From Chiloscyllium plagiosum (Eukaryota): a stretch of DNA of 64,000 nucleotides. Within the stretch, counting starts at the first letter, position 1. The number at the start of each line of letters is the position of its first letter. Made by a program: the position numbers and the translations under genes. The DNA is taken from assembly GCF_004010195.1 (NCBI RefSeq), contig NC_057731.1:17822720-17886719 (forward strand), written 5' to 3'. The notes beneath the pieces are model-generated. The model had not been told where the DNA came from. It worked only from the letters and a program-made list of their open reading frames with translations, and searched no databases. Below are positions 31,985 through 62,903 of this stretch, one piece after another.

Positions 31985-33710
31985 CCTTAATGATTTTTGA
32001 GAAGATTTGTAGCCCAGGTTGATGGTAAGTATGTAAGTTAGCTCGTTGAGCTTGGAGGTTTGTTTTCAGATGCTTCGTCATCATACTAGTGAACATTATC
32101 AGTGATAGTCTCTGATGAAGCACGAGTGGTATGTCCCGCCTCTCTCTTTATAGATCTTGGTTTCTTAAGGTGGGTGATGTCATTTTGGTTCTTTTTTCAA
32201 GGGAATTCAGATAGGATCTAAATTGATATTGACTTCTGGTTAGAATGCCATGCCTCTGACAACCACCTGATGAAGGAGCAGCACACCGAAAGCTAGTGTT
32301 TCCAAATAAACCTGTTGGAATATAACCTGGTGTTGTGTGATTTTTAACTTTTCACACCCCAGTCCACCCCAGTCTGGCATCTCTAAATCATGCCTCTAAG
32401 AATTCTCATGTGTGTCTTTGTTTTGCCTGTTGCGTGTATTGTCCCATTCAAAGTGGTGTCCTTCTTTGTCTGTATGTATAGAAACTAGTGATAGTGGGTC
32501 ATGTCTTTTGGTGGCCAATTGGTATCCTGGTGGCAAATTTCCTGCTAGTTTGTCCGATGTAGTGTTTTTTATAGTTCTTGCACGGTATCTTGTAAATGAT
32601 GTTTGTTTTGTGGTGGTATCTAATGGATCCTTTAGGTTTATTAGTCGCTGTTTAAGTGTGTTGGTAGGTTTGTGGGCTACCATGATGCCAAGGGGTCTGA
32701 GTAGTTTGGAAGTCATTTCTGATATCTCTGAATGTGGTGACTTTTATAATTATTCAGCTCTTATTCATCATTAGAAACTGAAAAAATATTGGTATGAGGA
32801 AGATAATCATGATTTGAACTCTGGGGAAGCAAATGAGTGAAGAATTGTAATTGTGGCTATAGATTTTGATTGCATTGTGTCTGCTTGTTTGGGTTTGTTT
32901 CTGAGGAATCGATGGATTGTGTTTATTGGGTACCTGTTTTTCTTGAAAATGTTATATAGATATTTTTGTTCTGCTTTTTATAGTTATTGGGTTCTGCAGT
33001 GTGATGTAGCTCATTGAAATAATGTCTTGACGCAGCTCTGTCTATGGGTCTTGGGGTGATTGTTTGTGAAGTTAAGTATTTGGTCCTTGTGTGTTGTTTT
33101 TCTCTAGACACTGGTTTGAAGCTCTCTGTTAACTATACGTTCAACTGTCACGTCGTGGATGGGAGTCTGTTGTCGTTCTCCTTTTTTATGAATTTTATGT
33201 CTGTCAGGATATTGTTGATGGTGTTGTATGTTTCATCTAATTTGTTCTGTTGGGCGATGACAAAGGTGTCATCTATGTAGCAGACCCAAAGTTTGGGTTG
33301 GATAGGTGGGCGGGCAGCTTGTTCAAGTCTCTGCAATACTGCTTCCGCTATGAGCCCTGATATTGGTGATCCCAGAGATGTTCCGTTGACTTGTTTCTAT
33401 GTTTTGTTATTGAATGTGAAGTGAGTGGTGAGGCACAGGTTCACTAGCTTGAGGATGTTGTCTTTGCTAATGAAGTTGGTGCTGTGTGGTATTTGTGGTC
33501 TTGGTTTTCCTGGGAGTTATGCCAAAGTTTCTTTGGACAGGTCGATGTTAATTGATGTGAAAAGGGCTGTAATGTCAAAGGAGACCATTATTTCATCCTC
33601 TTCTATCTTGTTGTGTTTGGTGTTCAGGTATTCTTCGGTGGAGTGAATGGAGTGGTGTGAATCTTCAATTAGGTGTTTTAGTTTTTGGTACAGTTCTTTG
33701 GCCAGTCTAT
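31985..33710 (-). mobile_element. Penelope-like element (RT and GIY-YIG), decayed, with nested insertions
   Basis: Reverse strand reads GTSLGSPISGLIAEAVLQRLE..QPKLWVCYIDDTFVI (RT) and YKIPCK..KHYIGQTSRKFATRI..KRHDPLSLVSIH (GIY-YIG). Degenerate hammerhead at 32067-32104. Confidence 0.9.
32258..32388 (+). mobile_element. Short Penelope-terminus insertion carrying a hammerhead motif; 9-bp TSD
   Basis: cac CTGATGA a ggagcagcacacc GAAA gcta gtg at 32264-32298, followed by the AATAAA-containing terminus. TSD catgcctct at 32249-32257 and 32389-32397. Confidence 0.8.
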
Positions 33711-34269
33711 GTATATATGATCAAGGTATTAATTGTAATTCATACATCACCAATCTCTTATTTTGTTCAGTATAGAGGGCTATCATTTATCAACAAGCAG
33801 TGCAGCCTGGTGCTCATCACTCCCATCTAACATTTACACATTACAAACTTGCACACATTTACAAATGCTGCCAGCATCACATTGAGTGTTCCCTCTAACT
33901 TTTCTGGGGCATATGCAGAACCTGAATTAGTCTGAGTGGCACACTGTATCCATTGAGCTGAAATCATGTTGCAACTTTTCTTAGTTTATTTACTGACAAT
34001 TAAAAGCATGTATTTTTGTTATTTTACAACATTCTACCTGCATATTGCAACTTTTCACAGGGTTAATTAATAAAGATAGTATTTATGTTATTTTACAATT
34101 GCAAGTATTCTACCTGCTAAAATTATTTGCTTGGCTCAGAAGTCTGAGGACCTGTATGGTGGTGGTATGTGTATACCACATAAACTAGGTGACCAAAAGA
34201 GGACACGAGTAACTTATTTGTTGGCAGCTTTTCACACCTGTCTTTATTTGCGGCATAATGATTACAAAC

Positions 34270-34385
34270 GGGTCACCGGACTCGAAACTTTAACTCTGCT
34301 TTCTCTCCACATCCAGACCTGCTGAGTTTCTCCAGCAAACTATGCTTTTTTTCAGATTTCCAGTATCCACAGTTCTTTGTTTTAT
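34270..34385 (+). mobile_element. Short Penelope-terminus fragment of another family, with a partial hammerhead (stem II and GAAA only)
   Basis: gggtc-accg-gactc-GAAAC then ...ccagacctgctgagtttctccagca, related to the termini at 49723 and 56150. Confidence 0.6.
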
Positions 34386-34429
34386 TGTTGATTGCAAATT
34401 TGATATTTAGTCCAAATGAAATATACGAC

Positions 34430-35435: not shown

Positions 35436-35479
35436 TTTATTTTTTTATTCATTTTGTGGGATCTGGGCATCACTGGCCA

Positions 35480-38400
35480 CAGTTTTATTGCCTGTCCCTA
35501 GTTGCCCCTGAGAATGGGGTAGTGAGCTGCCTTCTTGAATCGCTATAGAGCACCTGCTGTGGGTTGACCCAGAATGCCATTAGGGAGGGAATTCCAGGAT
35601 TTTGACCCAGTGACAGTGAAGGAATGACAATACATTTCCAATTCAGGATGGTGAGTGGTTTGGAGGGCAACCTGAATGTTCCCATACATCTGCCCTTGTC
35701 TTTCCAGATGGAAGAGGTAGTTGGTTTGAAAGGTGCTCTTTGAGGATCTTATAGATAGTACGCACAGCTGGTTCTGAGCATTAGTGATGGAGGGAGTGAA
35801 TGCTTGTGGATGTTGTACCAATCAAGCCGGCTGCTTTGTCCTGGATGGTGTCAAGCTTTTTTTAGTGTTGTTGGGACTGCACTCATCCAGGCACGTGGGG
35901 AGTATTCCATCACACTCCTGACTTGGGCATTGGAGATAGGCTTTGGGGAGTCAGGATGTGAGTTACTCACTGCAGTATTCCTAGCCTCTGAGCTGATCTT
36001 GTAGCCATTGCATTTGTGTGATGAGTCGAGTTGAGTTTCTGATCAATGATAACTTCCAGGATGTTGATAGTGGGGGATTCAGTGATGATCACACCACTAA
36101 ATGTCAAGGGCAGTGGTTAGATTGTCTCTTATTGGAGATGGTCATAGCCTGGCAATTATGTGGTACGAATGTTTCTTGCCACTTGTCAACCCAAGTCTGA
36201 ATATTGTCCAGATCTTGTTGGCATTTGGACATATATTGCTGCAGTACCTGAGGAGTCAGGAATGGTCTGAACATTGTGCAATCATCAGCGAACCTTATGA
36301 TGGAGGGAAGGTCATTGATGAAGCAGCTGAAGATGGTTGGGCTGAGGACACTACCCTGAGGGACTCCTGCACAAATGTTCTGGAGCTGAGATGACTGACG
36401 TCCAACAACTATGACCATCTTCCTATGTGCCCGGAATGACTCTAAGCATCAGAGAGTTTGCCCCCTGATACCCACTGATTCCAGCTTTGCTAGGGTTCCT
36501 TGATGCCACATTCATCAAATGCAACCTTGATGTGAAGAGCTGTCACTCTCACCTCACCTCTGGAATTCAGCTCTTTTGTCCATGTTTGAACCAAGGCTGT
36601 AATGAGGAGCTGAGTTGTCCTGATGGAACCCAAACTGGGCATCAGTGAGCGGGTTACTGCTTGATAGCACTGATCATGACACCTTTCATCACTTGACTGA
36701 TGATTGTCAGTAGATTGATGGGGCTGTAACTGACTGGGTTGGATTTGTCCTGCTTTTTATGTACAGGACATACCTGGGCAACTTGCCACATGTGGGGTAG
36801 ATGCCAGACTTGAAACTGTACTGGAACAGCTTGGCTAGGGGAGCGGCATGTTCTAGTGCACAAGTCTTCAGGACTATTGCTGTAATATTGTCAGGGCTCA
36901 TTGCCTTTGTAGTATCCAGTGCCTCCATTCATTTCTTGTTATCATGTTTCATGAATCGAATTGGCTGAAGACTGGTATCTGTGATGCTGGAGACCACCTG
37001 AGGAGCCTGAGGTGGATTATCCACTCGTCCCTTCTTGCTGAAGATTGCTGCAAAAGCTTCAGCCTTATCTTTTGCACTGATATGCTGGGCTCACCCATCA
37101 TTGAGGATGAGATATTTATGGAGCTTCCTCCTCCAGTGTTTAATCATCCACCACAATTCACAACTGGATGTGGAAGGAATGTGAGATTAGTTCTGATCTG
37201 TTGGTTGTGGGATTGTTTAACTCTGCCTATTGCTTCCTGTTTATGCTGTTTGGCGTACCAGTAGTCCTGTTTGGTTGCTTTACCAGGTTGACACCTCATC
37301 TTCAGGTATGTCTGGTGCTGCTCCTGGCATGTCCTTCTGCACACTCCATTAAAGCAGAGTTGATCTCCTGGCTTGATGGTAATGGTTCAGAGGGGGATAT
37401 GCCAAGCCATGAGATTACAGATGGCTCACAGCACCTCATGGATGCCCAGTCTTGAGTTACTAGACCTGTTCAAAGTCTGTCCCATTTAACACAATGATGG
37501 TGCCATACAACACAATGGAGGTATTCTCAATGTGAAGGTGGTGGCCACTATTACCAATACTGCCATTGACAGATGCATCTGCAGCTGGCGTATTGGTGAG
37601 GATAAGGTCAAGTATGTTTTTCCCTCTTGTTGGTTCCCTTACCATGTGCTACAGACCCAGCCGAGCAGTTATGTCATAGAGTCATAGAGATGTACGGCAT
37701 GGAAACAGACCCTTTGGTCCAACCATCCATGCTGACCAGATATCCCAACCCAATCTAGTCCCACCTGCCAGCACCCCGCCCATATCCCTCCAAACCCTTC
37801 CTATTCATATACCCATCCAAACGCCTTTTAAATGTTGCAATTGTACCAGTCTCCACCACTTCATCTGGCAGCTCATTCCATACATGTACCACCCTCTGCG
37901 TGAAAAAGTTACTCCTAAGGTCTCTTTTATATCTTTCCCCTCTCACCCTAAACCTATGCCTTCTAGTTCTGGACTCCCCCACCCCAGGGAAAAGACTTTG
38001 TCTATTTATCCTATCAATGCCCCTCATAATTTTGTAAACCTCTATAAGATCACCCCTCAGCCTCTGATGTTCAAGGGAAAACAGCCCCAGTCTATTCAGC
38101 CTCTTCCTACAGCTTAAATCCTCCAAACCTGGCAACATCCTTGTAAATCTTTTCGGAACCCTTTCAAGTTTCATACCAGCTTTCTGATAGGAAGGAGACC
38201 AGAATTGCACACAATATTCCAACAGTGGTCTAACCAATGTCCTGTAGAGCCGCAACTTGACCTCCCAACTCCTGTACTCAATACTCTGACTGATAAAGGA
38301 AAGCATACCAAACACCTTCTTCACTATCCTATCTACCTGCAACTCCACTTTCAAGGAGCTATGAACCTGCACTCCAAGGTCTCTTTGTTCAGAAACACTC

Positions 38401-43745: not shown

Positions 43746-46635
43746 TATATGAAGATAAACTCAAACCACAATGAGAACCATTCTGATCTCTTACTCATAC
43801 CTTGTGAATCCATTACTTGTAGTCAAGGGAGTCATTTGCTTCCAAGTACTTATTCTCCTTTCAAAGGAAATTTATCTGACAAATTAACTTTTTAAGGATT
43901 TACTTCTGAAGAATGTTTACACAATACATGAATGAAAAAAGATAGTTTGATTTGAATTGCAGAAAATAATAAAATATTTCATTATCTCAAACATCATTGG
44001 TGTGACCAGTAGATTGCTTAGCATGATGAAAACTATGCTGGCATGCTTTTGTTTTCCATGCATGAGAGAAACGCTTGCAGTTATTTGGTGTCTTTTTTGT
44101 GTTTTTTTCTACACAGTTTAGAATGTTGCCACAATGCTATATTTTGTGCCAAGTACAACCACAGACATGAGTGCAATGTAGAAATGATGGATCAAGCCAG
44201 ATGTCAAAAATCCCCAGTGGTATAGCTGGGGTGTATGTGACAGGAAGATAGGGGCTTAATAATTGTAAATTATTTTTCTCCAAATAAAACCACAGGAAGA
44301 CACACTATGAAATTTCAAACTGTAATTTTACACATGAAGTATTACTTCAAACTGAAAGAATTATTTATCTCAGTGAATTTTAACCACCTGGCATCAAGGT
44401 AATCAAACAAATATGATTTTTTAAAATTAAAATTACAGCAAAAAAATTACTTGTACAATTTTAGAATTTTAAAATGTGTGAGAAAAAGCAGACTAAATAT
44501 TATGTCATTATGATTTTCCATTTTACCTTTCTTTCAAATTATAGTTTGTTTATTTGCAGTTCCCTTAAAACTGGGAAATGTTAGTTGTGGTGAAATGTAA
44601 TATATATGTCCTTGAGGAAAGGCAGCAATGGTTTATTAGACTGTTTCCTGGCATGTGGAATGTCTTTTGAGAAGGTATTATAAAAACTAGACCTATATTC
44701 ATGAAGTTTAGAAGAGGTGATTTTGTTAAAAAGGACTGATTATTAAGCGTAAGGTTCTTTGATGATTGAGTGGGTAGTGACACAGGACTAAGGAGCAAGT
44801 GTAGGTCACTTGGCCCTTCAAGGCTGCTCCACCAATCCATAAGATCATGGCTGATCTGGTTGTGGTCTCAACCTCTCTCTGCTGTCTGTCCCCTATAACC
44901 CTTATCAATCAAAAATATGTCCAACTCAACCTTGAATATATTCAATAATCCAAACTTCATTGCTTTCTGAGGTAGCTAATGACACTCTGAGAGAAAAATA
45001 AATCTTCCCATCTTTAAAAGTGAGACCTGTTACTGTTAAACGAGGCCCCTAGATTGAGCCACTCCTACAAGGTGAAACATTCCCTCAGAATCTATATCTT
45101 TGGTAATTTTTGCCCTTGTTGGTATTCTGGGCGCTGTCCCAAAAATGGGCTATGTCTGCATCCAATCCTGGCCACCACACATAACGTCATGCCAACATCT
45201 TCATTTTGGAAACCCCCTGGATGACCCCGGTGGAGTTCAGCCAGTATCTGGGTGGCGAGCTTTGCTCAGGACAATCACTCTTGTTCCCCATAATAATATG
45301 CCGTCCCCTACTATGATCTGGTTTTGCTGGGTCCAGAAAGATTTCTATTCTAGCTGTGATGGCTCTTTTGTTTCCGCCATCACTACCATCTGTTTTGGTT
45401 TTGCCAAGATGCGACCTTTTTGTACCCACAGTTTGATATTGTCAGCAATGACTGGAACGGTGTCCAGAATGTTTAAAACCAGAAAGGACTCTTCTAGTGG
45501 AGAGACCACCTGTGGTGTATTTGCCTGTGAAGGTGGCTCAATCCATCTGCATTTACCACTTGGCCTCCCAGATGGTGTTCCACTTGTAATTATATACGCT
45601 CAGAATAAGAGCCCACCACTGAATTCGACCTGAAGCTATGGCCCTGTCCTCTTTAAGTAGCCTTAGCAGGGGTTTGTGGTCTGTTCCTATTACAAATTTA
45701 CGTCCATAAAGTTATTGGTGGAACTTTCTCACACCAAAGATGACATTCCTCTCCGCTGGGCCAATGGTGAGCCTTCACTACCCGGATATGGAAAGTGAGG
45801 CATTTCATGTCAGCAGCACACCTCAGCTGGAATCGTAGTCTGGCAACACCTTTTACGATAGCTGCTGTGTCACTTCCGTAAAGGCTACATCTTGTCTCCG
45901 TGACCATTTCCAATGCTGACCCTTTTTCAATAGCAGCTATAAGGATGCCAGGTTGTAGGCCAGGTTTTTATGAAGTTTGTGTAATAAATCACCAGCCCAA
46001 GGAAAGACCTATACATCAGTACAGACATGGAAGCAGGAGCACCTTTGATCACCCTCACTTTATCTTCCTATGGGTGTAACCCAGTCTAAATGGCTCTGTA
46101 GCCCAAGCAGGTCACTTGGGCTGCCTGGAACATACATTTCTGTCCTTACATGTACATCTGCCTGGGAGAAATGTCGAAGGACTATATCCAAGTTCTCTAA
46201 ATGCTCTTTATTGCTCTTCCTGGTTACTAGCGTGCCGTCCAAATAAAGGGTGACCTGGGGTAGTCCTTGTAATATGCTCCTCATCATCCACTGGAAAATG
46301 ACACAGGTTGATGATATCCCAAATGGCAGTCTAGCATACTGATACAATCCCTTATGGGTATTAATTGTGGCATAGCTGCTGCTCTCCCTGCAAAGGCTAA
46401 CTGACCCATTGGTCTTCACAGTTGGTGCTGCCCATTCCACAAACTGTACTGGTTTGATTACCCCGTCACTTTCCACCCTCCTGATTTCTGCTCCTACTTT
46501 TACACATAAGGCAAATGGCAGTGGGCTGGCCTTGTCGAATCATGGAATTGCTTCCTGGTCAACATGCAAGGTGGCCTTGGCTCCTTTGATAGCCCCTATA
46601 CCTTCCTGAAAAACCTCCATGTATTGATTAGATTA

Positions 46636-47870
46636 AGTTAAAAATCACACAACACCAGGTTATAGTCCAACAGGTTTAATTGGAAGCACACTAGCTTTCG
46701 GNNNNNNNNNNNNNNNNNNNNNNNNNNNNNNNNNNNNNNNNNNNNNNNNNNNNNNNNNNNNNNNNNNNNNNNNNNNNNNNNNNNNNNNNNNNNNNNNNNN
46801 NNNNNNNNNNNNNNNNNNNNNNNNNNNNNNNNNNNNNNNNNNNNNNNNNNNNNNNNNNNNNNNNNNNNNNNNNNNNNNNNNNNNNNNNNNNNNNNNNNNN
46901 NNNNNNNTGTGTGTGTGTCTGTCTGGGGTGGGGGTTATGACTGTGAGAAAGTGTGTGTGTTTGTAATGAGTGCAGAGTGTCTTAAGTCTGTGACGGGGTG
47001 CATGTGTGAGTCTGGGAGTGTGTGTCTATAAAGGTGTGTGTAGGTGTCTGTGCACGTCTGTGTATACCTGTGTCCATGTGTATGTGAGAGTGTGTGTATG
47101 TAGGAATGTCTGTGTGTGTGTGTGTGTGTGTGTAGTGCAATGGTGATCACCTGTAATGTGACATGAACCCAAGGTCCTGGTTGAGGCCCTCCTTATGGGT
47201 ACCGAACTTAGCTATTAGCCTTTGTTCGGCCACTTTTCTCTGCTGCCTGTCCCGAAGTCCGCCTTGGAGGATGGTCACCCAAAGGTCCGAGGCTGAATGT
47301 CCTGGACCACTGAAGTGTTCCCCAACTGGGAGGGAACCCTCCTGATTGTTGTGCGGTGCCCATTCATCCGTTGTCGTAGCCTTTGCTCGGTTTCCCCAAT
47401 GTACCATGCCTCTGGGCATCCTTGCCTGCAATGTACAAGATAGACAACGTTGGCTGAGTCACATGAGTACCTGCCATGTACAAGGTGGGAGGTGTTCCCA
47501 CGTGTAATTGTGATATCTATGTCTACAATCTGACGTGTCTTGCAGCGTTCACCGTGACAGGGTTGTATGGAGTTGTCCTGAGAGCCGGGCAGTTCGCTAC
47601 AAACAATGATCTGTTTGAGGTTTGGCGGTTGTTTAAAGGCAATTAGTGGAGGTATGGGGAAGGTCTTTGTGAGGTGCTCATCCTCATTGATAATGTGTTG
47701 CAGGTCACGAAGAACGCTATAAATTCTGTGTTACGATCGAGCCCTCCACTATCACCTAATGAAGGAGCGTCGCTCCGAAAGCTAGTGTGCTTCCAATTAA
47801 ACCTGTTGGACTATAACCTGGTGTTGTGCGATTTTTAACTTTGTAGACCCAAGTCCAACACCGGCAAATC
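46636..47870 (-). mobile_element. Penelope-like element 3' part (GIY-YIG) with an inverted terminal repeat; 12-bp TSD
   Basis: Reverse strand reads CDSANVVYLVHC..WYIGET..PVGEHFSGPGHSASDL.V.ILQGG..AEQRLIAKFGTH..GLN.D.GFMSHY. Termini 46636-46701 and about 47775-47842 are inverted copies. TSD ttgattagatta at 46624-46635 and 47871-47882. Confidence 0.9.
46702..46907. other. Assembly gap (N run)
   Basis: Run of n. Confidence 1.
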
Positions 47871-47871
47871 T

Positions 47872-48525
47872 TGATTAGATTAGATTACTTACAGTGTGGA
47901 AATAGGCCCTTTGGCCCAACAAGTCCACACCGACCCGCCGAAGCGCAACCCACTCCCCTACATTTACCCCTTCACCTAACACTACGGGCAATTTAGCATG
48001 GCCAATTCATCTAACCTGTACACTTTTTTGAACTGTGGGAGGAAACTGGAGTACCCGGAAGAAACCCACGCAGACATGGGGAGAATGTGCAAACTCCTCA
48101 CAGTCAGTCGCCTGAGGCGGGAATTGAACCCGGGTCTCTGGCGCTGTGAGGCAGCGGTGCTAACCACTGTGCCACCGTGTCGCCCACTAAATTTTTAATA
48201 GATTAGATTAGATTACTTACAGTGTGGAAACAGGCCCTTTGGCCCAACAAGTCCACACCGACCCTCCGAAGAGCAACCCACCCAGACCCATTCCCCTACA
48301 TTTACCCCTTTACCTAACACTACGGGCAATTTAGCATGGCCAATTCACTTGACCTGCATGTTTTTTTTGGACTGTGGGAAGAAACCGGAGCTCCTGGAGG
48401 AAACCTTCATAGACATAGTGAGAATGTGCAAACTCCACACAGACAGTTGCCTGAGGTGGGAATTGAACCCAGGTCTCTGGCGCTGTGAGGCAGCAGTGCT
48501 AACCACTGTGCCACCATGCCGCCCA
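47872..48525 (-). mobile_element. Two HE1-like SINEs in tandem (about 47872-48186 and 48200-48525)
   Basis: Each has a (gatta)n tail, the core, and A/B boxes on the reverse strand. Confidence 0.92.
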
Positions 48526-49722: not shown

Positions 49723-49915
49723 GAGGAGAAAGTGAGGACTGCAGATGCTGGAGATCAGAGCTGAAAATGTGTTGCTGGAAAAGCGCAGCAGGTCAGGCAG
49801 CATCCAAGGAGCAGGAGAATCGATGTTTCAAGGGCTTATGCCCGAAACGTCGATTCTCCTGTTCCTTGGATGCTGCCTGACCTGCTGCGCTTTTCCAGCA
49901 ACACATTTTCAGCAC
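49723..49915. mobile_element. Palindromic Penelope-terminus mini-element; 12-bp TSD
   Basis: Inverted arms gctgaaaatgtgttgctggaaaagcgcagcaggtcaggcagcatccaagga and their reverse complement. Centre gggcttatgcccGAAACGTC. TSD tgaaataactcc at 49711-49722 and 49916-49927. Confidence 0.9.
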
Positions 49916-50147
49916 TGAAATAACTCCACAAAGATCGGTATCCTGTCACTCAGTCTCCCTTTATTTACATCTGCTTAGTACATGACACTGACCCAGCTAG
50001 CTCAGAGCTGGCTCCTTGAGGGAACATAACTCCTGACACTCCTGTTCATATTTGTCAGCCACGGCTTCCTGAACAGACCAGCCCCAATCAGGGAACGCAT
50101 ATTCTATGAGGTCAACCTGGCTGACCTTGTTCCAGTCACTTCACGTA

Positions 50148-54288: not shown

Positions 54289-54435
54289 CTGAATGGTCTG
54301 CCATCATCTTCCATATGGGGGTGTTATCAGTGTATTGGAGAGTGACAGATGTGACATCCTTATTCAAGAAAAGATGTAAGAACATTCCCAGAAACCATAA
54401 GTAATTAACTGAGGATAGTCAGCATTGATTTCTAA

Positions 54436-54522
54436 GCAATCTGATGAAGGAGCAGCCCTCCGAAAGTGAGTACTTCCAAATAAACCTGTTGAATATAACC
54501 TGGCATATGTGATTTTTTAACT
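54436..54522 (+). mobile_element. Short Penelope-terminus insertion with a degenerate hammerhead; 11-bp TSD
   Basis: CTGATGA a ggagcagccctcc GAAA gtga at 54441-54469. TSD ttgatttctaa at 54425-54435 and 54523-54533. Confidence 0.8.
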
Positions 54523-55147
54523 TTGATTTCTAAAAGGCATTTTCTGATTAAGTAAGAGAGAAGGTTGACTTAAAGGAGTGTGGTGTTTGTTGTCTCTACA
54601 GAATTTTAAAAAAGCATTTGACAAAGTACCATATAATGGCAGGAAGTGAGGCTTGTGGTATCAGAGAGTCGCTGCTCTATTGCATAAAATAATTCACTGA
54701 GGGACAGGAGACAGTGAGTTATATAAATGGTTCTTTTCACACTGAAGGGTGGGTTGACAGTAGAGCTTTTTCAGGGTAAATGGTGGGACACTGTTTTTCT
54801 GAATGTAAAGTAGAATTTCAAAATTTACCGACTATATCAAACTTGGAGGAGTTATGGAAGACGGCAGCCACTGGAGGAGGCAAGCTGGGTATATTGGTGC
54901 TAGTCCTGAATCTGCAAAAGTAGAGAGTTAGTAGCAGGATATATATATTCTGTTTTTTTTCTGTCAGTCCCTGAAGTGAGGAGATTCTGAATCCCCTGTT
55001 AAAACTACTCATCAAAACCAAAATTATTATTAATGTGAAAGTGATTGACCAGCTTTCTGATTACCTCATTGCAACATGAGGAAATGGTAAAGAGGAACCA
55101 ATCAAACTAGGAGAAGGAGCAAACTGTTAAATGAATTGTCGGTACAG

Positions 55148-55480
55148 GATTAGATTAGATTAGATTAGATTAGATTAGATTCCCCTACAGTGTGGAAACA
55201 GGCCCTTTGGCCCAAAAAGTCCACACCGACCTCCGATGAGTAACCCACCCATTTCCCTCTGACTAATGCATCTATCATTATGGGCTTTTCAGCATGGCCT
55301 ATTTACCTAACCTGCATATCTTTGGACTGTGGGAGGAAACCGGAGCACCCGGAGGAAACCCACGCAGACACAGGGAGAATGTGCAAACTCCACACAGACA
55401 GTCGCCCGAGGGCTGGAATTGAACCTGGGTCCCTGGTGCTGTAAGGCAGCAGTGCTAGCCACTGAGCCACCATGCTGCCA
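55148..55480 (-). mobile_element. HE1-like SINE with a (gatta)n tail; a second partial copy follows at about 55500-55680
   Basis: A/B boxes on the reverse strand and the HE1 core. Confidence 0.9.
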
Positions 55481-56030
55481 AAACACTTTGAGCCATTGAG
55501 TCCGTACAGTGTGGATGCAGACCATTCAGCCCATTGAGTCCACACCGACCTTCTGAAGAGCATCCCACCCAGACTCACCCTTCGACGCTATCCCTGTAAC
55601 CCTGCATTTCTCATGGCCAATCCATCTGACTTGCACATCTTTAGACTTTGGGAGGAAGCTAGGACACGCAGACATGGGAGACTATATGAAGTTTGCACAT
55701 TCTCCCGTTGTGGGTATAATTATGTTTAAAAGACATTTGGATAGGTACAGGAATAGGAAAGGTTTGGAGGGATATAGGCCAGGAGCAGAAAGGTGGGGCT
55801 AGTTTAGTTTGGGATTATGTTTGGCATGGACTGGTTGAATCAAAGGGTCTGTTTCCATGCTGTATGACTCTATGACTAAGTGACAGATGGGATTTAAAAT
55901 AGAGAAGTGCAATGTGATGCTATTTGGCAGAAAGGATAAGGAAAGGCAAAATAGGATTAATGGCACAATTCCAAACAGTATGCAGGAGCAGAGGGATTGA
56001 GGGTGCAGGTACATTGACCTTTGAAGGTGT

Positions 56031-56121
56031 AGCTGAAAATGTGTTGCTGGAAAAGCGCAGCAGGTCAGGCAGCATCCAAGGAGCAGGAGAATCGATGTTT
56101 CGGACATAAGCCCTTCTTCAG
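56031..56121 (-). mobile_element. Single-arm Penelope mini-element with a hammerhead motif
   Basis: Reverse strand ttc CTGAAGA a gggcttatgtcc GAAA catc. Flanking repeat gaaggtg at 56023-56029 and 56122-56128. Confidence 0.85.
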
Positions 56122-56149
56122 GAAGGTGATAGGACATAATAGGAGAATG

Positions 56150-56360
56150 AAAACGTGTTGCTGGAAAAGCACAGCAGGTCAGGCAGCATCCAAGGAACAG
56201 GAGAATTGACGTTTCGGGCATAAACTCTTCTTCCTGAAGAAGGGCTTATGCCCGAAACGTCGATTCTCCTGTTCCTTGGATGCTGCCTGACCTGCTGCGC
56301 TTTTCCAGCAACACATTTTCAGCTCTGATCTCCAGCATCTGCAGCCCTCACTTTCTCCTC
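56150..56360. mobile_element. Palindromic Penelope mini-element with an intact + strand hammerhead; 15-bp TSD
   Basis: Inverted arms. TSD cataataggagaatg at 56135-56149 and 56361-56375. Confidence 0.9.
56231..56264 (+). ncRNA. Minimal type I hammerhead ribozyme motif (intact core)
   Basis: uuc-CUGAAGA-a-GGGC uuau GCCC-GAAA-CGUC^gau. All core bases are present, with palindromic ACGU in place of stem III; stem I is weak. Predicted cut after C56261. Confidence 0.75.
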
Positions 56361-57739
56361 CATAATAGGAGAATGGTTAACTATGCGTCTGGATCTTTGC
56401 CTTCATGGATAGAGGCATTGTGTATAAAAGCAAGGAAGTTATGTTGACCCTTTATGAAGCATTGGTTAGATTCCAGCTGGAATTCTGTGTCCAGTACAAG
56501 TCATAACGTCTGAATGTGAGGATCCTTAAGAGAGTTCAGAAAGATTTTGTAAAATATTCCAGGGTGGGGACTTTAGTAAAAAGGTTAAGTTGAAAAGGCT
56601 AGTGTTGTCTTCCTTTTTGATTTATTGAGGGGAGATTTGATAGAGGTGCACAATAACATGGCAGATTTGGATAAAGTAGATGTGGAAAAACTGTTTGCAT
56701 TAGCTGTTCGAACAAGGACAGAGGGGATACAGGATTCTTATTCTTGGGAGACAAGTGTGAAATACAACATTTTTTAAGCAGTAAGTGCCAGGAGGGTGGT
56801 GGAAGAAGAAACAATGATTTCAAAAAGAAGTTGATTAAGTCCCTAAAGGAAATAAAATTGCAGAGCTCTGGGGATTGAGTGAGACCCACTGGATTGCTTG
56901 ACAGAGAAGTTATATGATCTGAATGGGACAAATGGCCTCTTTCTGTGGTGTAAACATTCCTGGACATGAAATTCCTATTGTTCACTGTTGTAAAGTCTTC
57001 CCACTGTCAGTGGAGATATGAAAGGCTTGCTAGATGTAATAAGATTCCCCCTCTTATCTCCCGTTGTCTGAGCCAGGGTCACCAATATGACATTAGAGAA
57101 CCTGAAGTTTTCAGCCATTTTGTCAATGTCAAAAGTTCCTCTGAAACCAATGTATATCCCCTTTAAGAGATACTCACTGCCTCAAAGTGATACAGTGTGG
57201 ACATGAATGGCTGCATGTTTGAATTGTTATATTGGTCTGCAGCTTTAACATGGTCTCTGGATCAATGTTAAAGCAGCACGTTTGGTGTACACCCTATATT
57301 CCTCTTTTCCAATCTCTTGGCCGTTACGGTAAATCTAAATCACAAAGCTAGCAATCTCATACCCATCAAATCAATCTGAGGACAAAAATTGTTCATTGGT
57401 TTTCGTAACTTGTGAGCCCATTTAAAATAAATAGGCAGCAAGTGTCAGCACCAATGCATGAGGTTACATCCTGACCACTTTCAGCACAACCCATGTCGAT
57501 TGCTTCACTTTTGACAATGATAATATCGACATTACATACAGTCATCAGAGTCCATATAAAATGCTAATTTGACACAGGACCTGCCATTTTCATCACATTA
57601 GTTGACACCCTCTCTTAAAAATGTACATCTCAACAAGCAATCACCTGCATGAAGTATATCCTTGACCCTTAAAGGCATCCACCCTCGAAATTCTAGGAAT
57701 TCTGTAGCAAGTAATTCATTTCCTATCTCCCTAAAATAT

Positions 57740-58270
57740 GTCCAATATCCACAAAGCACAAGTCAGGAGTGTGATGGAATACCCTCTGGATGAGTGCAGC
57801 TCCAACAACACTCATCAATCTCAACACCATCCAGACAAAGCCGCCTGCTAGATTGGCACTCCAACCACCACAATAAGCATTGACTACCTCTATAATTGAA
57901 ACACAGTGATGGCAGCAGTGTGTGCCATCTACAAGATGCACTGCAGTAACTCATCAAGCCTCCATCGACACCACCTTGCAAGCACGTGACCTCTACCACC
58001 TAGAAGGGCAAGGGCAGCAGATGTATGGGAGCATTACTACATGCAAATTCTCTGCCTAGTCATATACTGTCCTGACTCAGAACTATATCACTGTCCCTCC
58101 AGTGTTGCTTAGTCAAAATCCTGAAGCTCACTTCTTAACAACACTATGGTTGTCCCTACACACAAAGAGTGAACAATTCAACAAGGCAGGCCAATTCTCC
58201 AGGACAATTAGGGTTAGGGAGTAAGTGCTGGCCCAGTCAGTGATACTCACATCCCACGAACTAACCAAAA
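57740..58270 (+). mobile_element. CR1/L2-group LINE 3' end (family of 35480-39580)
   Basis: aagcacaagtcaggagtgtgatggaatac..gcagctccaacaacactc..ccatctacaagatgcactgcag. Confidence 0.8.
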
Positions 58271-59783
58271 ACATTTAGGTTATTTGCTAGCTATTTGTTT
58301 TGTCTCAGAGGATCATAAGTCCTTGGAATTCTGTTCCTCAAAAGGTGGTGGCAGTAGAATCTTTGAATATGTTTAAGACAGAGATGGATAGATTCTTGGG
58401 AAGGGGGTGAAAGGTTAACGTCTCATAAATAGAGTGGCCTGGGTCATCTGATCTCCCATTTATGTTGCAATGTATTTGGGCTTACAGTGATAGAAAATGA
58501 TCTGCACACTTCCAAGTTGCTTAAATGCTTTATATTGCCAGTCAAGTGAACTGGTTTTAAAATTACCTGGTAAGTCCTCAGTAATTAGAACCAAGAGATG
58601 ATTTTGGCTTACCTGTGACTGAATAAAAGAGGTGGTCAAAACTCAGTAGCTTGTTCTGCATCTTTCTCAATTTTGATGTCCAGCAACTTCTTTAACTAGT
58701 CTATAAAAAAGCAAATTTTTCTTTATGTCTTGTTCAGGATGGCTGCATGCAGATCGAAGGTAGATAATGAAAGGCATTGTAGATGTGAGTGGTGGTGTGT
58801 AGAAGCTACATTATACAAAGATAGAAGAGGCTTGATGGACCAACTGGTCTTTGTTCTATTTCTGTACATTCCTGTAGTCTGGCAAATGGAGTTGCAATTC
58901 CCTGTCTAAGATCATGTGACTTTGTCACTGGCACCACCAGAGTCAGGAGGTCTGTGGGCTTTAGAAAGGCCTTTGACTAGATTCCACATGGTGGACTGGT
59001 TAGTCAGGTTTAGATCACATAGGATTCTGGGCTTGATCATAGGAAATAGAGGATGGTGGAAGAGGGTTTTTGTTCAGACTAGAGGCCTGTGACCAGCAGT
59101 GTGCCACAAGGATTGGTGCTGGGTCTACTGTTGTTCAACATTTATATAAATGATGTGGATGAGACTATAGGAGGCATGATTAATAAGTTTGCAGATGGTA
59201 CCAAAATTGTTGGTATAGTGGACAGTGAATAAGATTATCTAAGAGTATAATGGGATCTAGATCACCTAGGGCCAGTAGATGAGGAATGGTAGATGGAGTT
59301 TAATGCAAATAAGTGCAATGTATTGCATTTTGATAAGACAAACCAGGAAAGGACTTATACAGTTAATGGGGAGTGTCATTGAAAAGAGAGATACATAGTT
59401 CCTTGAAAGTGGCATCACTGGGTGGGTGAAGAAGGCATTTGGTATACTTGCCTTCATTGGTCAGAGCATTGAGTATGTTGGGATGTCATATTTTGGTTGT
59501 ACAGGACTTTGGTAAGGCCACGTTTGGAGAACTGTGTACAATTCTGTATGCCCTGCTCTCAGAAGGATGTTATTACACTCTTCCAGTCTAAAAAAGATTT
59601 GCAAAGATATTACCAAGACTGGATGGTTTGAGTTATAAAGTGAGGCTAGAATACTGGGACATTTTTCCTTGGAGCATATGAGATTGAAGGGTGATCTTAT
59701 ACAGGCTTATAAGATCATGAGGGGCTTGGCTAAGGTGAACAGCCAAGATCTTTTCCCCAGGGTAGGGGAGTCCAAAACTAGAA

Positions 59784-60117
59784 GGCGGCACGGTGGCACA
59801 ATGGTTAGCACTGCTGCCTCACAGCGCCAGAGACCCGGGTTCAATTCCCACCTCAGGCGACTGACTGTGTGGAGTTTGCACGTTCTCCCCGTGTCTGCGT
59901 GGGTTTCCTCCGGGTGCTCCGGTTTCCTCCCACAGTCCAAAGATGTGCAGGTCAGGTGAATTGGCCATACTAAATTGCCCGTAGTGTTAGGTAAGGGGCA
60001 AATGTAGGGGTATGGGTGGGTTGCGCTTCGGCGGGGCGGTGTGGACTTGTTGGGCCGAAGGGCCTGTTTCCACACTGTAAGTAATCTAATCTAAATCTAA
60101 TCTAATCTAATCTAATC
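59784..60117 (+). mobile_element. Young full-length HE1-like SINE
   Basis: ggcggcacggtggcacaatggttagc (A-box), gggttcaattccc (B-box), core and (taatc)n tail. Confidence 0.95.
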
Positions 60118-60253
60118 TTTTTAGATTTAAGATAAGAGGGCAAAGACTCAAAAAGACCTGAGGGGCAACTTTTTTCATCAGAGGGTGGTGCGTATATGGA
60201 ATGAGCTGCTAGAGGAATGGATAGAGGCGAGTACAATTACAACATTTGAAAGA

Positions 60254-60345
60254 GCTGAAACTTTATTGCTGGAACAGCACAGCAGGTCAGGCAGCATCTA
60301 GGGAACAGAAGATTCGACGTTTCGGGCACATGCCCTTCTTCAGGA
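60254..60345 (-). mobile_element. Single-arm Penelope mini-element; 13-bp TSD
   Basis: TSD aacatttgaaaga at 60241-60253 and 60346-60358, inside a CR1 3' end. Confidence 0.9.
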
Positions 60346-60346
60346 A
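60313..60346 (-). ncRNA. Minimal type I hammerhead ribozyme motif (intact)
   Basis: Reverse strand UUC-CUGAAGA-a-GGGC augu GCCC-GAAA-CGUC^GAA. Stem I UUC/GAA, a perfect stem II, the ACGU palindrome and a GUC cleavage triplet. Confidence 0.8.
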
Positions 60347-62903
60347 ACATTTGAAAGACACCTGGACAGGTACGTAGACAGGCTTAGAGACATATGGGCC
60401 AAACGCAGGCAAATGGGACTAGTTCAGATAACGAAACTGGGTCAGCATGGCTAAGTTGGGCTGAAAGGCCTGTTTCCATGCTATATGACTCTATGACTGA
60501 CAGGAGTAAGAATTCAGTGCTTTAGCGCAATGGATATGGAAGTACCAATGACAGCCAGCTTCTGGGGAAATACCATCTACTCTCCCTTCTCTAAAGAAAT
60601 ATCTTGTGCCCACTTTGTCCCTTTACAAAGTAAGCTATTTTTAAGTCCTTCAGTATTTTTTTAGGTTTCTCACAATTGGAGGTCTCAGCACTGGCCAAAG
60701 AATGGAAATTGAGAGCAGAGCCGAACTAGCATGTATGGGAAGTATGAAGGCCAAGTCTCAGATTGCAGGTGTGTCATGGACCTGCAACAGCATAAGGAGC
60801 GTACTCCAGAAATTCTAAAGAACGTGCCTGACTTATTAGGGCTTTGCTATTTCTATGGGTTTTGGGTGTTATTGTGTGAAACTGAGAGAGCTAGCAAACC
60901 TTTCAGAGCCAACGTATGGGTAAATTTAATTAATTTGGATTTTTCTTTTCTCGTTCTTATGTTATAAATAGTTGTTTTTAAATTTATAAAGTTGGTTGTC
61001 TCATAATAATTACCCATTCAAGGGTTTTGGACAAGTTGTTTGATAAGCTGGTTTGGGTTGTTTTGTAAATAAGAGCTTTTTTTTAAAAAAAGTGCAGGAA
61101 TTTTCATGATTACTTGTTCTTCATAGGTATATTTCCATTTGTAATTTACTCACATTGAGGTGGATTATTAGATACCTGGTCATTTAATGAAAAATAGCAT
61201 CAATTTTGTTACCCTCTCTGGATTTGTGTCGTGATAAACAAATGGCGTTACTCAGGGTCAGATGGCTTTAAGTGTTGTGAAACTCGAAATATATAATACA
61301 CTTAACACATTTAATTATGGAAATAGAAATATTCTATTTTTACATGCATTTGAAGCACTGATTTTGCATGATTGTGTTGTCAACAGGGAACTTTACTTGC
61401 CAGCTATGCATGTAAAGAAAGAAGTATGCAACATTTCATCTTCCTCTGTGCGCAAACTGAGAACTGGCACAGGCACACTGTGCCAAATGGCCTCCTTCTG
61501 TGCTGTGAACTTCAAAACTTCTCTGGTCCTGTAGCTAGCAAAATCCCCTGCTGCCAATGTGGATCAGGAATGTTATCACAGCATTGAACAGATTTCTCAT
61601 GTGCAGATGCTTTGTTTTAATTATTATATAATGAGATCAAGAAGCAGATGAGAAGTACTGTTATATTTAAGGAACTGTCATTTATGAAGGAAAGACATGT
61701 GCCACTGTATAACTAAAACATGCTATATGCACATATTTATTTTGGTAAGTCTGATGTGTTTACGTACAATATGTGAGAGACACCAATATTTGTAGGTTAA
61801 AAGGCTTGTATATATGCATTTTGTGTTTTTATTTCATACTTCTGGGCACTGATGAAGAAACTCCACATGGAGTTCTAACTACCATTGCTAAAAGTATTTT
61901 TAGTGGTGTTATTCAATCCTTGTTTCTTGGATCTTTGATATCCTTATGTTATTTATCTTCAAGAATCTTCTCAATAGAATGTTTTTGTCTACATAACACC
62001 ATGGTGTACTGCTATTTAGCATTTAAGATTTTTAAGAAGATGTTGACTCAGGAAATAGATATGTACACCAATGAAAATATGAAGGTCACTGATATAGAGG
62101 GGAAAATAGTGAAAGGAAATATACGATACATGGTTGGGAGAGTGCGAAAAATACCAAAGTAAGTTTTGAGATGAGTTGAGAAGATGGGAGATGACAATAA
62201 GACAAAGTATCTGGGAAATAATGAAGATTAGAAAGGAAGGCTGGAAGATAGACTTTTAATTCTTTCTGTGAGAAATGTGAAAAGAGTTAAGTTTGTTTAT
62301 CATGTAAATGGAAAGTTAAGTACTGTCTGCACCGGTAATACAGTGCTAATTTAGTTCCCTGCATACCAATGAAAGCTGAAAATAAACACTGTATTCTGCT
62401 TCCTGTCTGATAGAGTTTGAATGGCTAAAATTAAATTGTGGTGCTACAACGTTTAGCTTGAATCATAAGAAAGTAAATTCATTGAATTTTGCAATCCTTA
62501 ATCTTGACTTTGCATTTTACTGCATTTCCTTCAGTAATTTGTTCTCTGACAAGTTGATTTATACATACATGTCCCTAATTTGAATAATTATTTTTAAAAA
62601 GTCAGTTGCAGCTGTCTTGGATCATTGCTGACAATTAAATTGCAAAATTATCCCCATTTTGTTTTGCAGTTCTAGCAAAACACAGTAACACCTTAATAGA
62701 AGCATGACCTGAGTAGGGAGTGTAGACTTCAGGGCAGCTATCCTTCGTGGTTATGATGCTTCAGCTACTTTCACTCCAGTAATAAACTGCACTTTTTCCT
62801 CTGAAGGATTACCTTAGTAACTTGCATTGATGTTGTAATACCATTCACTACAAGTCACAAAATGACAGATAATATTCTAATTGTTATGCTTTCCTTTCAA
62901 TAG

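What the first reader, a model, noticed from the sequence alone, without database searches (positions are those of the whole stretch)
32258..60358. A family of ultra-short, TSD-flanked mobile units built around minimal hammerhead ribozymes
Seen: at least six independent insertions of only about 90-210 bp (32258, 49723, 54436, 56031, 56150, 60254), each flanked by a 7-15 bp direct duplication. Each is essentially CUGANGA-stemII-GAAA-(ACGU or AGCU) plus a short 3' terminus. The single-arm ones all begin within about 10 nt of the CUGANGA core. Stem II covaries between families (GGGC/GCCC, GGAGC/GCUCC, GGGUC/GACUC). Known: Penelope-like elements carry minimal hammerheads with a palindromic stem III that are proposed to cleave as dimers. 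Inference: these are either non-autonomous ribozyme-defined retroelements (retrozyme-like) mobilised by PLE RT/GIY-YIG, or PLE copies whose reverse transcription stalls at the ribozyme. The shared 5' breakpoint is the unexplained part.
Basis: partly seen in the sequence, partly recalled or inferred. Interest (0 to 1): 0.85.

Follow-up and report, generated by a model that had tools for sequence, protein, structure and literature searches.

The report
Ultra-short truncated Penelope element insertions
These are real insertions, but they look like the stubby 3' tips of Penelope-like retrotransposons in a shark genome, a known kind of debris whose only unexplained feature is that nearly all stop at the same place beside the ribozyme motif.

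Summary
All six listed insertions are real and have exact 7-15 bp target-site duplications (TSDs). I found two more: a third family at 34269-34388 and a composite at 46636-47870. That makes 8 insertions and 11 arms from three families.

They fit severely 5'-truncated Penelope-like element (PLE) insertions. The composite joins a family A terminus to a GIY-YIG endonuclease fragment. Its homologues are shark proteins, including an 881-aa ORF with a reverse transcriptase domain. Each family has two alternative 3' ends 29-39 nt apart, matching the published PLE "tail". All 3 two-armed insertions carry an inverted arm with the tail on one side only.

The ribozyme appears to be a passenger:
- No arm of families B or C keeps more than 2 nt of the helix I 5' strand.
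- 0 of 10 short arms start at the cleavage site.
- No Rfam hammerhead model matches.

A retrozyme-like self-defined element is therefore not supported.

The shared 5' boundary holds in this small sample: 10 of 11 arms end between about -28 and +21 nt of the core. Earlier notes from this scan describe the same elements in other windows.

The parts
32258..32389 (+). Family A single-arm insertion, 132 bp. It starts 9 nt upstream of CUGAUGA (C3 at 32267). Helix II is decayed. It has the long (tail-bearing) 3' end. The TSD ATGCCTCT is at 32250-32257 and 32390-32397.
34269..34388 (+). Family C single-arm insertion, 120 bp, related to family B. It starts at the base of helix II (GGGUC/GACUC), so the CUGANGA box is absent. 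It has the long 3' end. The TSD is imperfect, TGATTACAAA / TGATTGCAAA (9 of 10), at 34259-34268 and 34389-34398.
46636..46701 (-). 3' end of the main body of the composite family A insertion: the hammerhead 3' half from helix II onward, then the short 3' end ...GATTTTTAACTT. It abuts the assembly gap.
46702..46907 (.). Assembly gap (N) inside the composite insertion. It hides the hammerhead core, helix I and part of the 3' UTR of the main body. I did not fill it.
46908..47149 (-). 3' UTR of the truncated PLE body. It is CA-rich on the element strand.
47150..47727 (-). C-terminal 199 residues of a PLE ORF: linker with a CX4CxxC-type motif plus the GIY-YIG-like endonuclease. There is one frameshift near 47338-47344. 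It matches residues 47-245 of P0001 at 66% and 80% identity.
47746..47870 (+). Inverted 5'-truncated family A arm of the composite insertion. The core is CUAAUGA at 47756, helix II is GGAGC/GCUCC, and it has the long 3' end with a 29-nt tail. Its 5' end lies somewhere in 47728-47746. The TSD TTGATTAGATTA is at 46624-46635 and 47871-47882.
49723..49915 (.). Family B fold-back insertion, 193 bp. The left arm is 49723-49829 (minus sense, long 3' end, starts at G12). The right arm is 49830-49915 (plus sense, short 3' end, starts at A9). The centre lies on helix II. The TSD TGAAATAACTCC is at 49711-49722 and 49916-49927.
54436..54523 (+). Family A single-arm insertion, 88 bp, with 5 nt before CUGAUGA (54441). 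Helix III is mutated. It has the short 3' end. The TSD TGATTTCTAA is at 54426-54435 and 54524-54533.
56030..56121 (-). Family B single-arm insertion, 92 bp. It starts exactly at C3 of CUGAAGA (56121) and has the short 3' end. The TSD GAAGGTG is at 56023-56029 and 56122-56128.
56150..56360 (.). Family B fold-back insertion, 211 bp. The left arm is 56150-56233 (minus sense, starts at G5, short 3' end). The right arm is 56234-56360 (plus sense, starts at C3, long 3' end with a 37-nt tail). The TSD CATAATAGGAGAATG is at 56135-56149 and 56361-56375.
60254..60345 (-). Family B single-arm insertion, 92 bp. It starts 2 nt (UC) before CUGAAGA (C3 at 60343) and has the short 3' end. The TSD AACATTTGAAAGA is at 60241-60253 and 60346-60358. 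The empty site is seen in paralogous host-repeat copies.

Best explanation
These are dead-on-arrival, extremely 5'-truncated insertions of at least three Penelope-like element (PLE) families in a shark genome. Family A is tied to a Neptune-like RT/GIY-YIG ORF. Families B and C are related to each other.

**Steps that are shown, or follow from published PLE biochemistry**
- The PLE endonuclease makes staggered cuts, giving TSDs of 7-15 bp.
- Reverse transcription starts at one of two internal RNA sites, not at the RNA 3' end. These lie about 54-64 nt and 86-99 nt downstream of the hammerhead cleavage position. This produces the short and the tail-bearing 3' ends.
- In 3 of 8 insertions both DNA ends were extended, giving an inverted arm or a fold-back, with the tail on one side only.

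**Inferred step**
- cDNA synthesis ends at the 5' edge of the hammerhead in 10 of 11 arms.
- I think this is because the template there is usually a short RNA whose 5' end lies at that edge, most simply the 5' end of the ordinary PLE mRNA.
- The enzyme starts copying only about 60-100 nt into that RNA, so it runs off almost at once (a "leader copy").
- I put this run-off reading at about 0.4. A stop or template jump at a protein-bound hammerhead is about 0.25.

The hammerhead is carried along rather than used, and the short copies lack helix I.
For: **Identity as PLE termini**
- One 12-bp TSD encloses a family A terminus, a 3' UTR, and 199 residues of an ORF.
- All 48 homologues at E<=1e-3 that carry a source name (7 of 48) are from sharks.
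- A profile of the homologues finds an 881-aa protein (P0049, E 4.9e-86). It has RVT_1 at 40.2 bits, above the cut-off. More distant 850-920-aa relatives have both RVT_1 and GIY-YIG; P0166 scores 23.7 bits for GIY-YIG, above the cut-off.
- The nearest ESM Atlas clusters carry GIY-YIG and HTH_animal.

**3' ends**
- Every family with two or more copies shows two alternative 3' ends. Family B ends at ...UUUUCAGC or 37 nt further on. Family A ends at ...UUAACUU or 29-39 nt further on.
- This matches the "two adjacent RT start sites" and the 30-40 bp tail of Frangieh 2024 and Craig 2021.

**Inverted arms**
- 3 of 3 two-armed insertions have one long and one short end. Craig 2021 describes the tail as present "often only at one end".
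- Both DNA strands are cleaved and extended in vitro.

**Precedent**
- Cervera 2014 states that most min-HHRs are single motifs, "probably related to truncated PLEs", and that pairs occur on opposite strands 100-700 bp apart.

**5' boundary**
- 10 of 11 arms end between about -28 and +21 of C3. Four family B arms from three insertions end within -2 to +2.
- nhmmer at E<=1 finds no shorter or intermediate copies.
- Even the best-fitting exponential length model gives p<=5e-4 for arms and p<=0.007 for insertions.

**Run-off rather than stall**
- In vitro product length follows the template 5' end for RNAs starting at -126 or -145, upstream of the hammerhead. Ribozyme mutants do not change the product.
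Against: - The sample is one 64-kb window: 8 insertions, 11 arms. The length window used in the test was chosen after seeing the data.
- Families B and C are not linked to a coding PLE inside this window. Their assignment rests on architecture and on the shared hammerhead and tail layout.
- Pfam, NCBIfam and PDB sequence searches did not name the window's own endonuclease fragment or its close homologues. Only 1 of 48 close homologues reaches GIY-YIG at E 7e-4.
- In Drosophila virilis Penelope, the transcription start lies 46 nt plus a 75-nt intron upstream of helix I. A start site exactly at the hammerhead edge therefore has no precedent.
- The 5' ends are spread over about 50 nt when all families are pooled. 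That is looser than a single run-off site.
- No tandem pLTR arrangement is present in the window.
Confidence: 0.8

Rival explanations
1. The 90-210 bp units are a self-propagating, non-autonomous, ribozyme-defined element, retrozyme-like or SINE-like. Short copies would be transcribed, recognised by PLE protein in trans, and copied again, with the hammerhead setting the unit's 5' limit.
For: - Density is high: 8 insertions in 64 kb, and 7 of 8 have no coding sequence.
- Unit length is tight.
- Earlier notes from this scan report the same kind of unit in many other windows. These are unchecked.
- A 2026 preprint argues that animal non-LTR retrozymes derive from PLE pLTRs.
Against: - There is no direct tandem of hammerhead units in the window. 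The neighbours 56030-56121 and 56150-56360 are separate insertions with separate TSDs.
- The helix I 5' strand is absent from 7 of 7 family B and C arms, apart from 2 nt in one of them. The copies therefore cannot fold a complete ribozyme.
- 0 of 10 short arms begin at the cleavage site.
- Copies carry inactivating changes in no consistent pattern.
- In the anole PLE, the RNA needed by the protein extends to +172 of the ORF. That is beyond the RT start sites at +111-118 and beyond the tail, so an inserted terminus should lack part of it.
Confidence: 0.1
2. The shared 5' boundary is produced by the enzyme, not by the RNA end. Reverse transcriptase stops or jumps template at a hammerhead held folded by bound PLE protein or by an RNA dimer. 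This would be a template-boundary effect like that of its relative telomerase.
For: - The 5' ends fall across the 5' half of the motif (helix I strand, core, helix II) in all three families.
- The 49723 fold-back is centred on the helix II hairpin.
- The anole hammerhead cleaves only when PLE protein is present, so the protein contacts that RNA region.
- One arm, the composite body, does read through. That fits a stop that is probabilistic rather than absolute.
Against: - In vitro, anole PLE products shorten as the template 5' end is moved. This holds for templates starting upstream of the hammerhead, and no dominant stop at the ribozyme is described.
- Ribozyme mutants leave the product size unchanged. 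I read the main text only; the supplementary figures were closed.
- The enzyme would already have unwound helices I, III and II before reaching the observed stop.
Confidence: 0.25
3. There is no special boundary. The copies are short only because PLE reverse transcription is poorly processive, and the apparent clustering is a small-sample or detection effect.
For: - Heavy 5' truncation is a known PLE trait.
- The sample is 11 arms from one window.
- Pooled 5' ends span about 50 nt.
Against: - nhmmer and blastn with the terminal units would detect 30-40 nt fragments, but found no arm shorter than 70 nt (measured to the short 3' end). They found none between 111 nt and about 1 kb.
- The best exponential model gives p<=5e-4 for 10 of 11 arms in 65-115 nt.
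- Four family B arms end within 4 nt of each other.
Confidence: 0.12
4. The palindromic units are DNA-level fold-back or MITE-type transposons, unrelated to reverse transcription.
For: Two units (49723 and 56150) are near-perfect inverted repeats with TSDs.
Against: - TSD length varies from 7 to 15 bp.
- The same sequences occur as single arms with TSDs.
- Arm ends coincide with the two alternative 3' termini of the single-arm copies.
- One terminus is joined to a PLE ORF.
Confidence: 0.02

Closest known systems
Canonical EN+ Penelope-like elements (Penelope/Poseidon and Neptune clades), as described by Craig 2021 and Frangieh 2024
   Same: [quoted passage not shown]
- A CX4CxxC-type linker motif.
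- Heavy 5' truncation and an inverted 5'-truncated arm.
- An optional 29-39 nt tail on one side, explained by two internal RT start sites.
- A min-hammerhead close to the 3' end.
- TSDs of variable length.
   Different: - 7 of 8 insertions keep nothing but the last 88-132 nt per arm.
- Their 5' ends cluster at the hammerhead. My searches did not find this stated in print. Lünse et al. is not held and supplements were closed.
- No tandem pLTR is present in the window.
- No ORF start is visible at helix II, unlike the anole element.
PLE min-hammerheads (Cervera and de la Peña 2014)
   Same: - CUGANGA and GAAA boxes.
[quoted passage not shown]
- A G10.1-C11.1 pair.
- Palindromic positions 15.2-16.2 (CG or GC) with no loop 3.
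- They occur mostly as single motifs attributed to truncated PLEs, and as pairs on opposite strands.
   Different: - The helix I 5' strand is missing from the family B and C copies here.
- Helix II is 4-5 bp here, against 7-8 bp in the Schistosoma families.
- No cleavage data exist for these sequences.
Metazoan non-LTR retrozymes (de la Peña lab 2020; Li et al. 2026 preprint)
   Same: Short non-coding hammerhead-bearing repeats in a PLE-containing vertebrate, flanked by TSDs longer than 4 bp. The preprint proposes that they derive from PLE pLTRs.
   Different: - Retrozymes are direct tandem repeats of about 150-450 bp, each with a canonical type I hammerhead, and are expressed as circular RNAs.
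- Here the units are dispersed single or inverted copies of 88-132 nt per arm, with an incomplete minimal motif.
5'-truncated and twin-primed LINE-1 insertions (recalled, not from a call)
   Same: Dead-on-arrival truncated copies with TSDs, and inverted structures that arise when both DNA ends prime cDNA synthesis.
   Different: LINE-1 starts at the poly(A) 3' end and truncates over a broad range. Here the start is internal, at two fixed sites, and truncation is concentrated at one place.

Membership tests
Penelope-like element (EN+) | Single ORF with a reverse transcriptase followed by a GIY-YIG endonuclease | tested here: met
   - The window holds only the C-terminal 199 residues (47727-47150).
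- A profile of its homologues hits P0049, 881 aa, E 4.9e-86, with RVT_1 at 40.2 bits (cut-off 29.6).
- Relatives P0166, P0164 and P0143 have both RVT_1 and GIY-YIG. P0166 scores 23.7 bits (cut-off 22.6).
- The window fragment itself has no Pfam hit.
- 1 of 48 close homologues hits GIY-YIG at E 7e-4.
- This applies to family A only.
Penelope-like element (EN+) | [quoted passage not shown] | tested here: met
   - Family B has a short end, or 37 nt more.
- Family A has a short end, or 29 or 39 nt more.
- 3 of 3 two-armed insertions have the tail on one side only.
- The feature is defined.
Penelope-like element (EN+) | Inverted 5'-truncated copy adjacent to the 5' end | tested here: met
   The composite 46636-47870 has an inverted arm at about 47746-47870. 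The fold-backs at 49723 and 56150 are the minimal form. The feature is described.
Penelope-like element (EN+) | Partial tandem arrangement forming pseudo-LTRs | tested here: not met
   blastn and nhmmer found no direct tandem of family units in the window. This is expected for truncated copies, so it does not exclude membership.
PLE minimal hammerhead (Cervera 2014 criteria) | CUGANGA and GAAA boxes, a nucleotide between 9 and 10.1, a G10.1-C11.1 pair, and palindromic 15.2-16.2 | tested here: met
   - Five family hits come from my descriptor, and all five have the 1-nt bulge and G10.1-C11.1.
- Two have a perfect core plus a palindromic ACGU. A third (AGCU) has a G5-to-A change.
- The simulated expectation for zero-mismatch hits is 0.08.
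- The criteria were read.
PLE minimal hammerhead (Cervera 2014 criteria) | Helix I of about 4-5 bp closing the motif | tested here: not met
   - Family B and C arms start at -2 to +21 relative to C3, so the 5' strand is absent. One arm keeps UC, which would pair with the GA after the cleavage site.
- The family A copies keep CAC/GUG only.
- The source elements may well have helix I; the inserted copies do not.
Hammerhead ribozyme (Rfam models) | Match to an Rfam hammerhead covariance model | tested here: not met
   There were no matches at gathering score over the whole window. There was no hammerhead match at E<=10 on 54300-60500. Minimal motifs lack helix III, which may explain this.
Hammerhead ribozyme | Self-cleavage after position 17, as monomer or dimer | not testable with these tools
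   This needs in vitro transcription. Indirectly, 0 of 10 short arms begin at the cleavage site.
Metazoan non-LTR retrozyme | Direct tandem repeats (dimers to multimers) of about 150-450 bp, each with a canonical type I hammerhead | tested here: not met
   There are no direct tandems. Units are 88-132 nt per arm and the motif is the minimal PLE type. The feature is defined.
Metazoan non-LTR retrozyme | Expression as linear and circular unit-length RNA | not testable with these tools
MITE / fold-back DNA transposon | Terminal inverted repeats with a TSD of fixed length | tested here: not met
   TSDs are 7, 8, 10, 10, 12, 12, 13 and 15 bp. The same sequences also occur as single arms.

The most novel reading that the evidence does not exclude
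The 90-130 nt units are not random truncation products. They are complete cDNA copies of a discrete short stretch of PLE RNA.
- Its 3' limit is the element's two internal RT start sites.
- Its 5' limit is an encoded boundary at the hammerhead. This could be the 5' end of the PLE mRNA, so the enzyme copies only its own leader. It could instead be a protein-bound hammerhead acting as a template boundary, as in telomerase.

If so, "leader copies" would be the main product of PLE activity in sharks. At the density seen in this one window they could number in the hundreds of thousands per genome, which is my extrapolation from a single window. They would also give the PLE hammerhead region a structural role in defining the copied unit.
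Probability: 0.4. Interest if true: 0.55.

Novelty: new member of a known kind. Interest (0 to 1): 0.4.

Why it matters
How PLEs transpose is still poorly understood. These natural insertions read like an in vivo record of the steps seen in vitro for one lizard element:
- two internal RT start sites, giving tail and no-tail ends;
- priming from both DNA ends, giving fold-backs with the tail on one side;
- use of uncleaved RNA, since no insert starts at the ribozyme cleavage site.

If the 5' boundary at the hammerhead holds genome-wide, it identifies either the PLE RNA 5' end or a template boundary. Both can be tested directly. It would also explain why single minimal hammerheads are so numerous in vertebrate genomes.

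For genome annotation, these units should be labelled as PLE termini rather than as ribozyme genes, microRNA hairpins or a new element class.

Tried and rejected
**Steps that gave nothing**
- Rfam at gathering score and at E<=10 on 54300-60500 gave no hammerhead. It gave only weak microRNA-like scores for the 56150 hairpin, far below the gathering scores. I read these as a by-product of the inverted repeat.
- Pfam on the window's endonuclease piece, Pfam on four homologues, NCBIfam and a profile against PDB sequences all gave no useful match.
- To collect more copies I scanned viral contigs (0 matches) and metagenome contigs (48 loci). All 48 loci match only 19-26 nt, so they are chance matches and I dropped them.
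- tblastn of 14 long PLE homologues found no N-terminal match in the window. I therefore could not test whether the termini overlap an ORF start as in the anole element.
- Folding the 3' regions gave z-scores of -2.6 and -2.3 for the 47756 copy and about 0 for the others. The idea that the short 3' end sits in the loop of an AC-rich hairpin remains only suggestive.

**Readings I rejected**
- Cleavage-defined 5' ends: 0 of 10 arms fit.
- MITE or fold-back transposon: TSD length is variable.
- Retrozyme: there are no tandems.

**Papers**
- Main text read: PMC11167929 (section 3).
- Whole-text parts 1-2 plus passages: PMC4209133.
- Passages only: PMC8557442, PMC6765202 and PMC7229834.
- Sections 16 and 18: PMC2377424.
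- Results part 1 and Discussion: preprint 10.64898/2026.07.22.740005.
- Supplements were closed. Frangieh Fig. S2 (genomic insertion ends), the Cervera supplementary alignments of fish motifs and the preprint's tables may bear on the 5'-end question.

Full report
**What is there.** I read the six listed places. I then searched the window with the units themselves by blastn and with family profiles by nhmmer at E<=1. The window holds 8 insertions and 11 arms from three families.
- Family A: 32258-32389, 54436-54523, and a composite at 46636-47870 with one arm on each strand.
- Family B: 56030-56121, 60254-60345, and two fold-backs at 49723-49915 and 56150-56360.
- Family C: 34269-34388. It aligns with family B over the 3' two thirds.

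No further copies or fragments were found.

**Target-site duplications.** Seven insertions are flanked by exact direct duplications of 7, 8, 10, 12, 12, 13 and 15 bp. The eighth (family C) has a 9-of-10 match. For 60254, three paralogous copies of the host repeat carry the duplicated word once, with no insert, so the empty site is visible. The insertions and their TSDs are real.

**The assembly gap.** The gap at 46702-46907 sits inside the composite family A insertion.
- To its left is the family A 3' part on the minus strand, starting within helix II.
- To its right are a TG-rich stretch and then an ORF fragment, also on the minus strand.
- One 12-bp duplication (46624-46635 and 47871-47882) brackets everything.

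Both sides therefore fit a single insertion. Nothing coding crosses the gap. Its length is unknown and I did not fill it.

**The ribozyme motif.** A descriptor was run with CUGANGA, an optional bulge, helix II of 4-8 bp, and GAAA.
- With one core mismatch allowed it finds six hits, five of them in families A and B.
- Four hits have a perfect core, against 0.08 expected in 200 simulated sequences.
- All five family hits have the extra nucleotide before helix II and the G10.1-C11.1 pair. Positions 15.2-16.2 are CG or GC in the intact ones.
- These are the features Cervera and de la Peña list as typical of PLE minimal hammerheads.
- Helix II is GGGC/GCCC in B, GGAGC/GCUCC in A and GGGUC/GACUC in C.

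The copies are not complete ribozymes, however.
- Family B and C arms begin at -2, 0, 0, +2, +6, +7 and +21 relative to C3, so the 5' strand of helix I is missing.
- 49723 has no CUGANGA box at all.
- The family A copies carry changes in the core or helices.
- Rfam has no hammerhead match.

**Link to Penelope-like elements.**
- In the composite insertion, the minus strand from 47727 to 47150 encodes 199 residues with one frameshift. They match residues 47-245 of P0001 at 66% and 80% identity.
- All 48 homologues at E<=1e-3 are short predicted proteins. The 7 with a source name are from five shark species.
- A profile search without a length limit finds 3334 proteins at E<=1e-3.
- These include P0049 (881 aa, E 4.9e-86), which carries RVT_1 above its cut-off upstream of the matched region. 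They also include more distant proteins of 800-920 aa with both RVT_1 and GIY-YIG.
- The Atlas look-alikes carry GIY-YIG and HTH_animal.
- Direct Pfam, NCBIfam and PDB sequence searches on the close homologues were blank or weak.
- The linker has a C-x4-C-x2-C motif in the homologues. Craig 2021 associates this kind of motif with Neptune-type elements.

Families B and C have no coding partner in this window. I assign them by architecture.

**The two 3' ends and the inverted arms.**
- Family B copies end either at ...UUUUCAGC, 62-64 nt after the cleavage position, or 37 nt further on, at 99 nt.
- Family A copies end at ...UUAACUU, 54-57 nt after it, or 29-39 nt further on.
- Both fold-backs and the composite have one long and one short end.
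- Frangieh et al. show that an anole PLE starts reverse transcription at two adjacent internal RNA sites, 111-118 nt into the ORF, with the hammerhead cut site at +26.
- In the same paper, the 30-40 bp "tail" of genomic copies is the stretch between those two sites, and both DNA strands are cleaved and extended.

The shark copies fit this closely.

**Prior knowledge of short copies.** Cervera and de la Peña already state that most minimal hammerheads occur as single motifs "probably related to truncated PLEs". They also note pairs on opposite strands 100-700 bp apart. The basic object is therefore known.

**The 5' boundary.**
- Relative to C3, the ten short arms begin as follows. Family A: -9, -5, and between -10 and -28. 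Family B: -2, 0, 0, +2, +6 and +21. Family C: +7.
- The eleventh arm, the composite's body, reads on for more than 1 kb.
- Measured to the short 3' end, the short arms are 70-111 nt long.
- No arm is shorter, and none lies between 111 nt and about 1 kb, although the searches would detect 30-40 nt fragments.
- Under the most favourable constant-fall-off model, 10 of 11 arms in 65-115 nt has p<=5e-4, and 7 of 8 insertions has p<=0.007. I set that length window after seeing the data, so the test is indicative only.
- None of the ten arms starts at the cleavage site. This agrees with the report that uncleaved RNA is the main template.

**Mechanism for the boundary (inferred).**
- In vitro, the anole enzyme's product length tracks the RNA 5' end for templates that begin upstream of the hammerhead. 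Ribozyme mutants do not change it.
- That argues against a strong stop at the motif. It favours run-off on RNAs whose 5' end lies at the hammerhead edge.
- Copying starts only about 55-100 nt downstream of the motif. An ordinary PLE mRNA beginning there would therefore yield exactly these stubs. Only read-through transcripts from upstream copies would give long insertions.
- Against this, the Drosophila virilis start site is 46 nt plus a 75-nt intron upstream of helix I.
- A protein-bound hammerhead acting as a stop or jump point remains possible.

**What I could not do.**
There is therefore no RNA evidence and no presence/absence test in the related species.
- The metagenome scan found only chance matches.
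- The boundary claim therefore rests on this one window.

**Literature searches on the boundary.** Six searches turned up no paper stating that PLE 5' truncation concentrates at the hammerhead. Lünse et al. is not held and supplements were closed, so I cannot say it is not in print.

**Verdict.** The best reading is extreme 5'-truncated PLE insertions: a new member of a known kind in a shark, with one detail worth following up.

Noticed in passing
window 32523-33717, minus strand: A second, older and more diverged PLE coding remnant. The RT region matches P0164 residues 440-578 and P0145 residues 273-445 at 26-33% identity, and there is a short endonuclease-region match at 32523-32642. The family A insertion at 32258-32389 lies just beyond its 3' side and may have landed in its 3' part.
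   Followed up: partly
TSDs at 34259, 46624, 49711 and 54426: 4 of 8 duplications begin with (T)TGA followed by two A/T bases, and 6 of 8 are at least 67% A+T. This is loosely in line with the AT-rich cleavage preference reported for the anole PLE.
   Followed up: no
window 47278-47344, and proteins P0007, P0010, P0017, P0018: The window's endonuclease fragment has a frameshift whose out-of-frame reading (...GNTSVVQDIQPRTFG) also appears at the C-terminus of predicted "proteins" from other sharks (Hemiscyllium, Mustelus). P0001 and P0002 keep the in-frame reading. A frameshifted subfamily seems to have spread, and these fragments are annotated as genes.
   Followed up: no
window 56150-56325: The fold-back gives weak matches to several Rfam microRNA precursor models (20-34 bits, against gathering scores of 81-104). 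Such hairpins could be mistaken for microRNA genes.
   Followed up: no
window 46702-46907: The assembly gap begins exactly inside the hammerhead helix II of an insertion that has an inverted arm about 1.1 kb away. Craig 2021 notes that such PLE structures often disturb assemblies.
   Followed up: partly
window 60150-60470, 37700-37900, 10990-11170 and 55650-55850: Several of the insertions sit inside copies of another abundant interspersed repeat. Its paralogues in the window serve as empty-site controls.
   Followed up: partly
window 32300-32389 and 47790-47870: In both tail-bearing family A copies, the short 3' end lies in the loop of a predicted hairpin whose 3' strand is the AC-rich tail. 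The z-scores are -0.7 and -2.3. This resembles the AC-rich stem-loop where the anole enzyme starts.
   Followed up: partly
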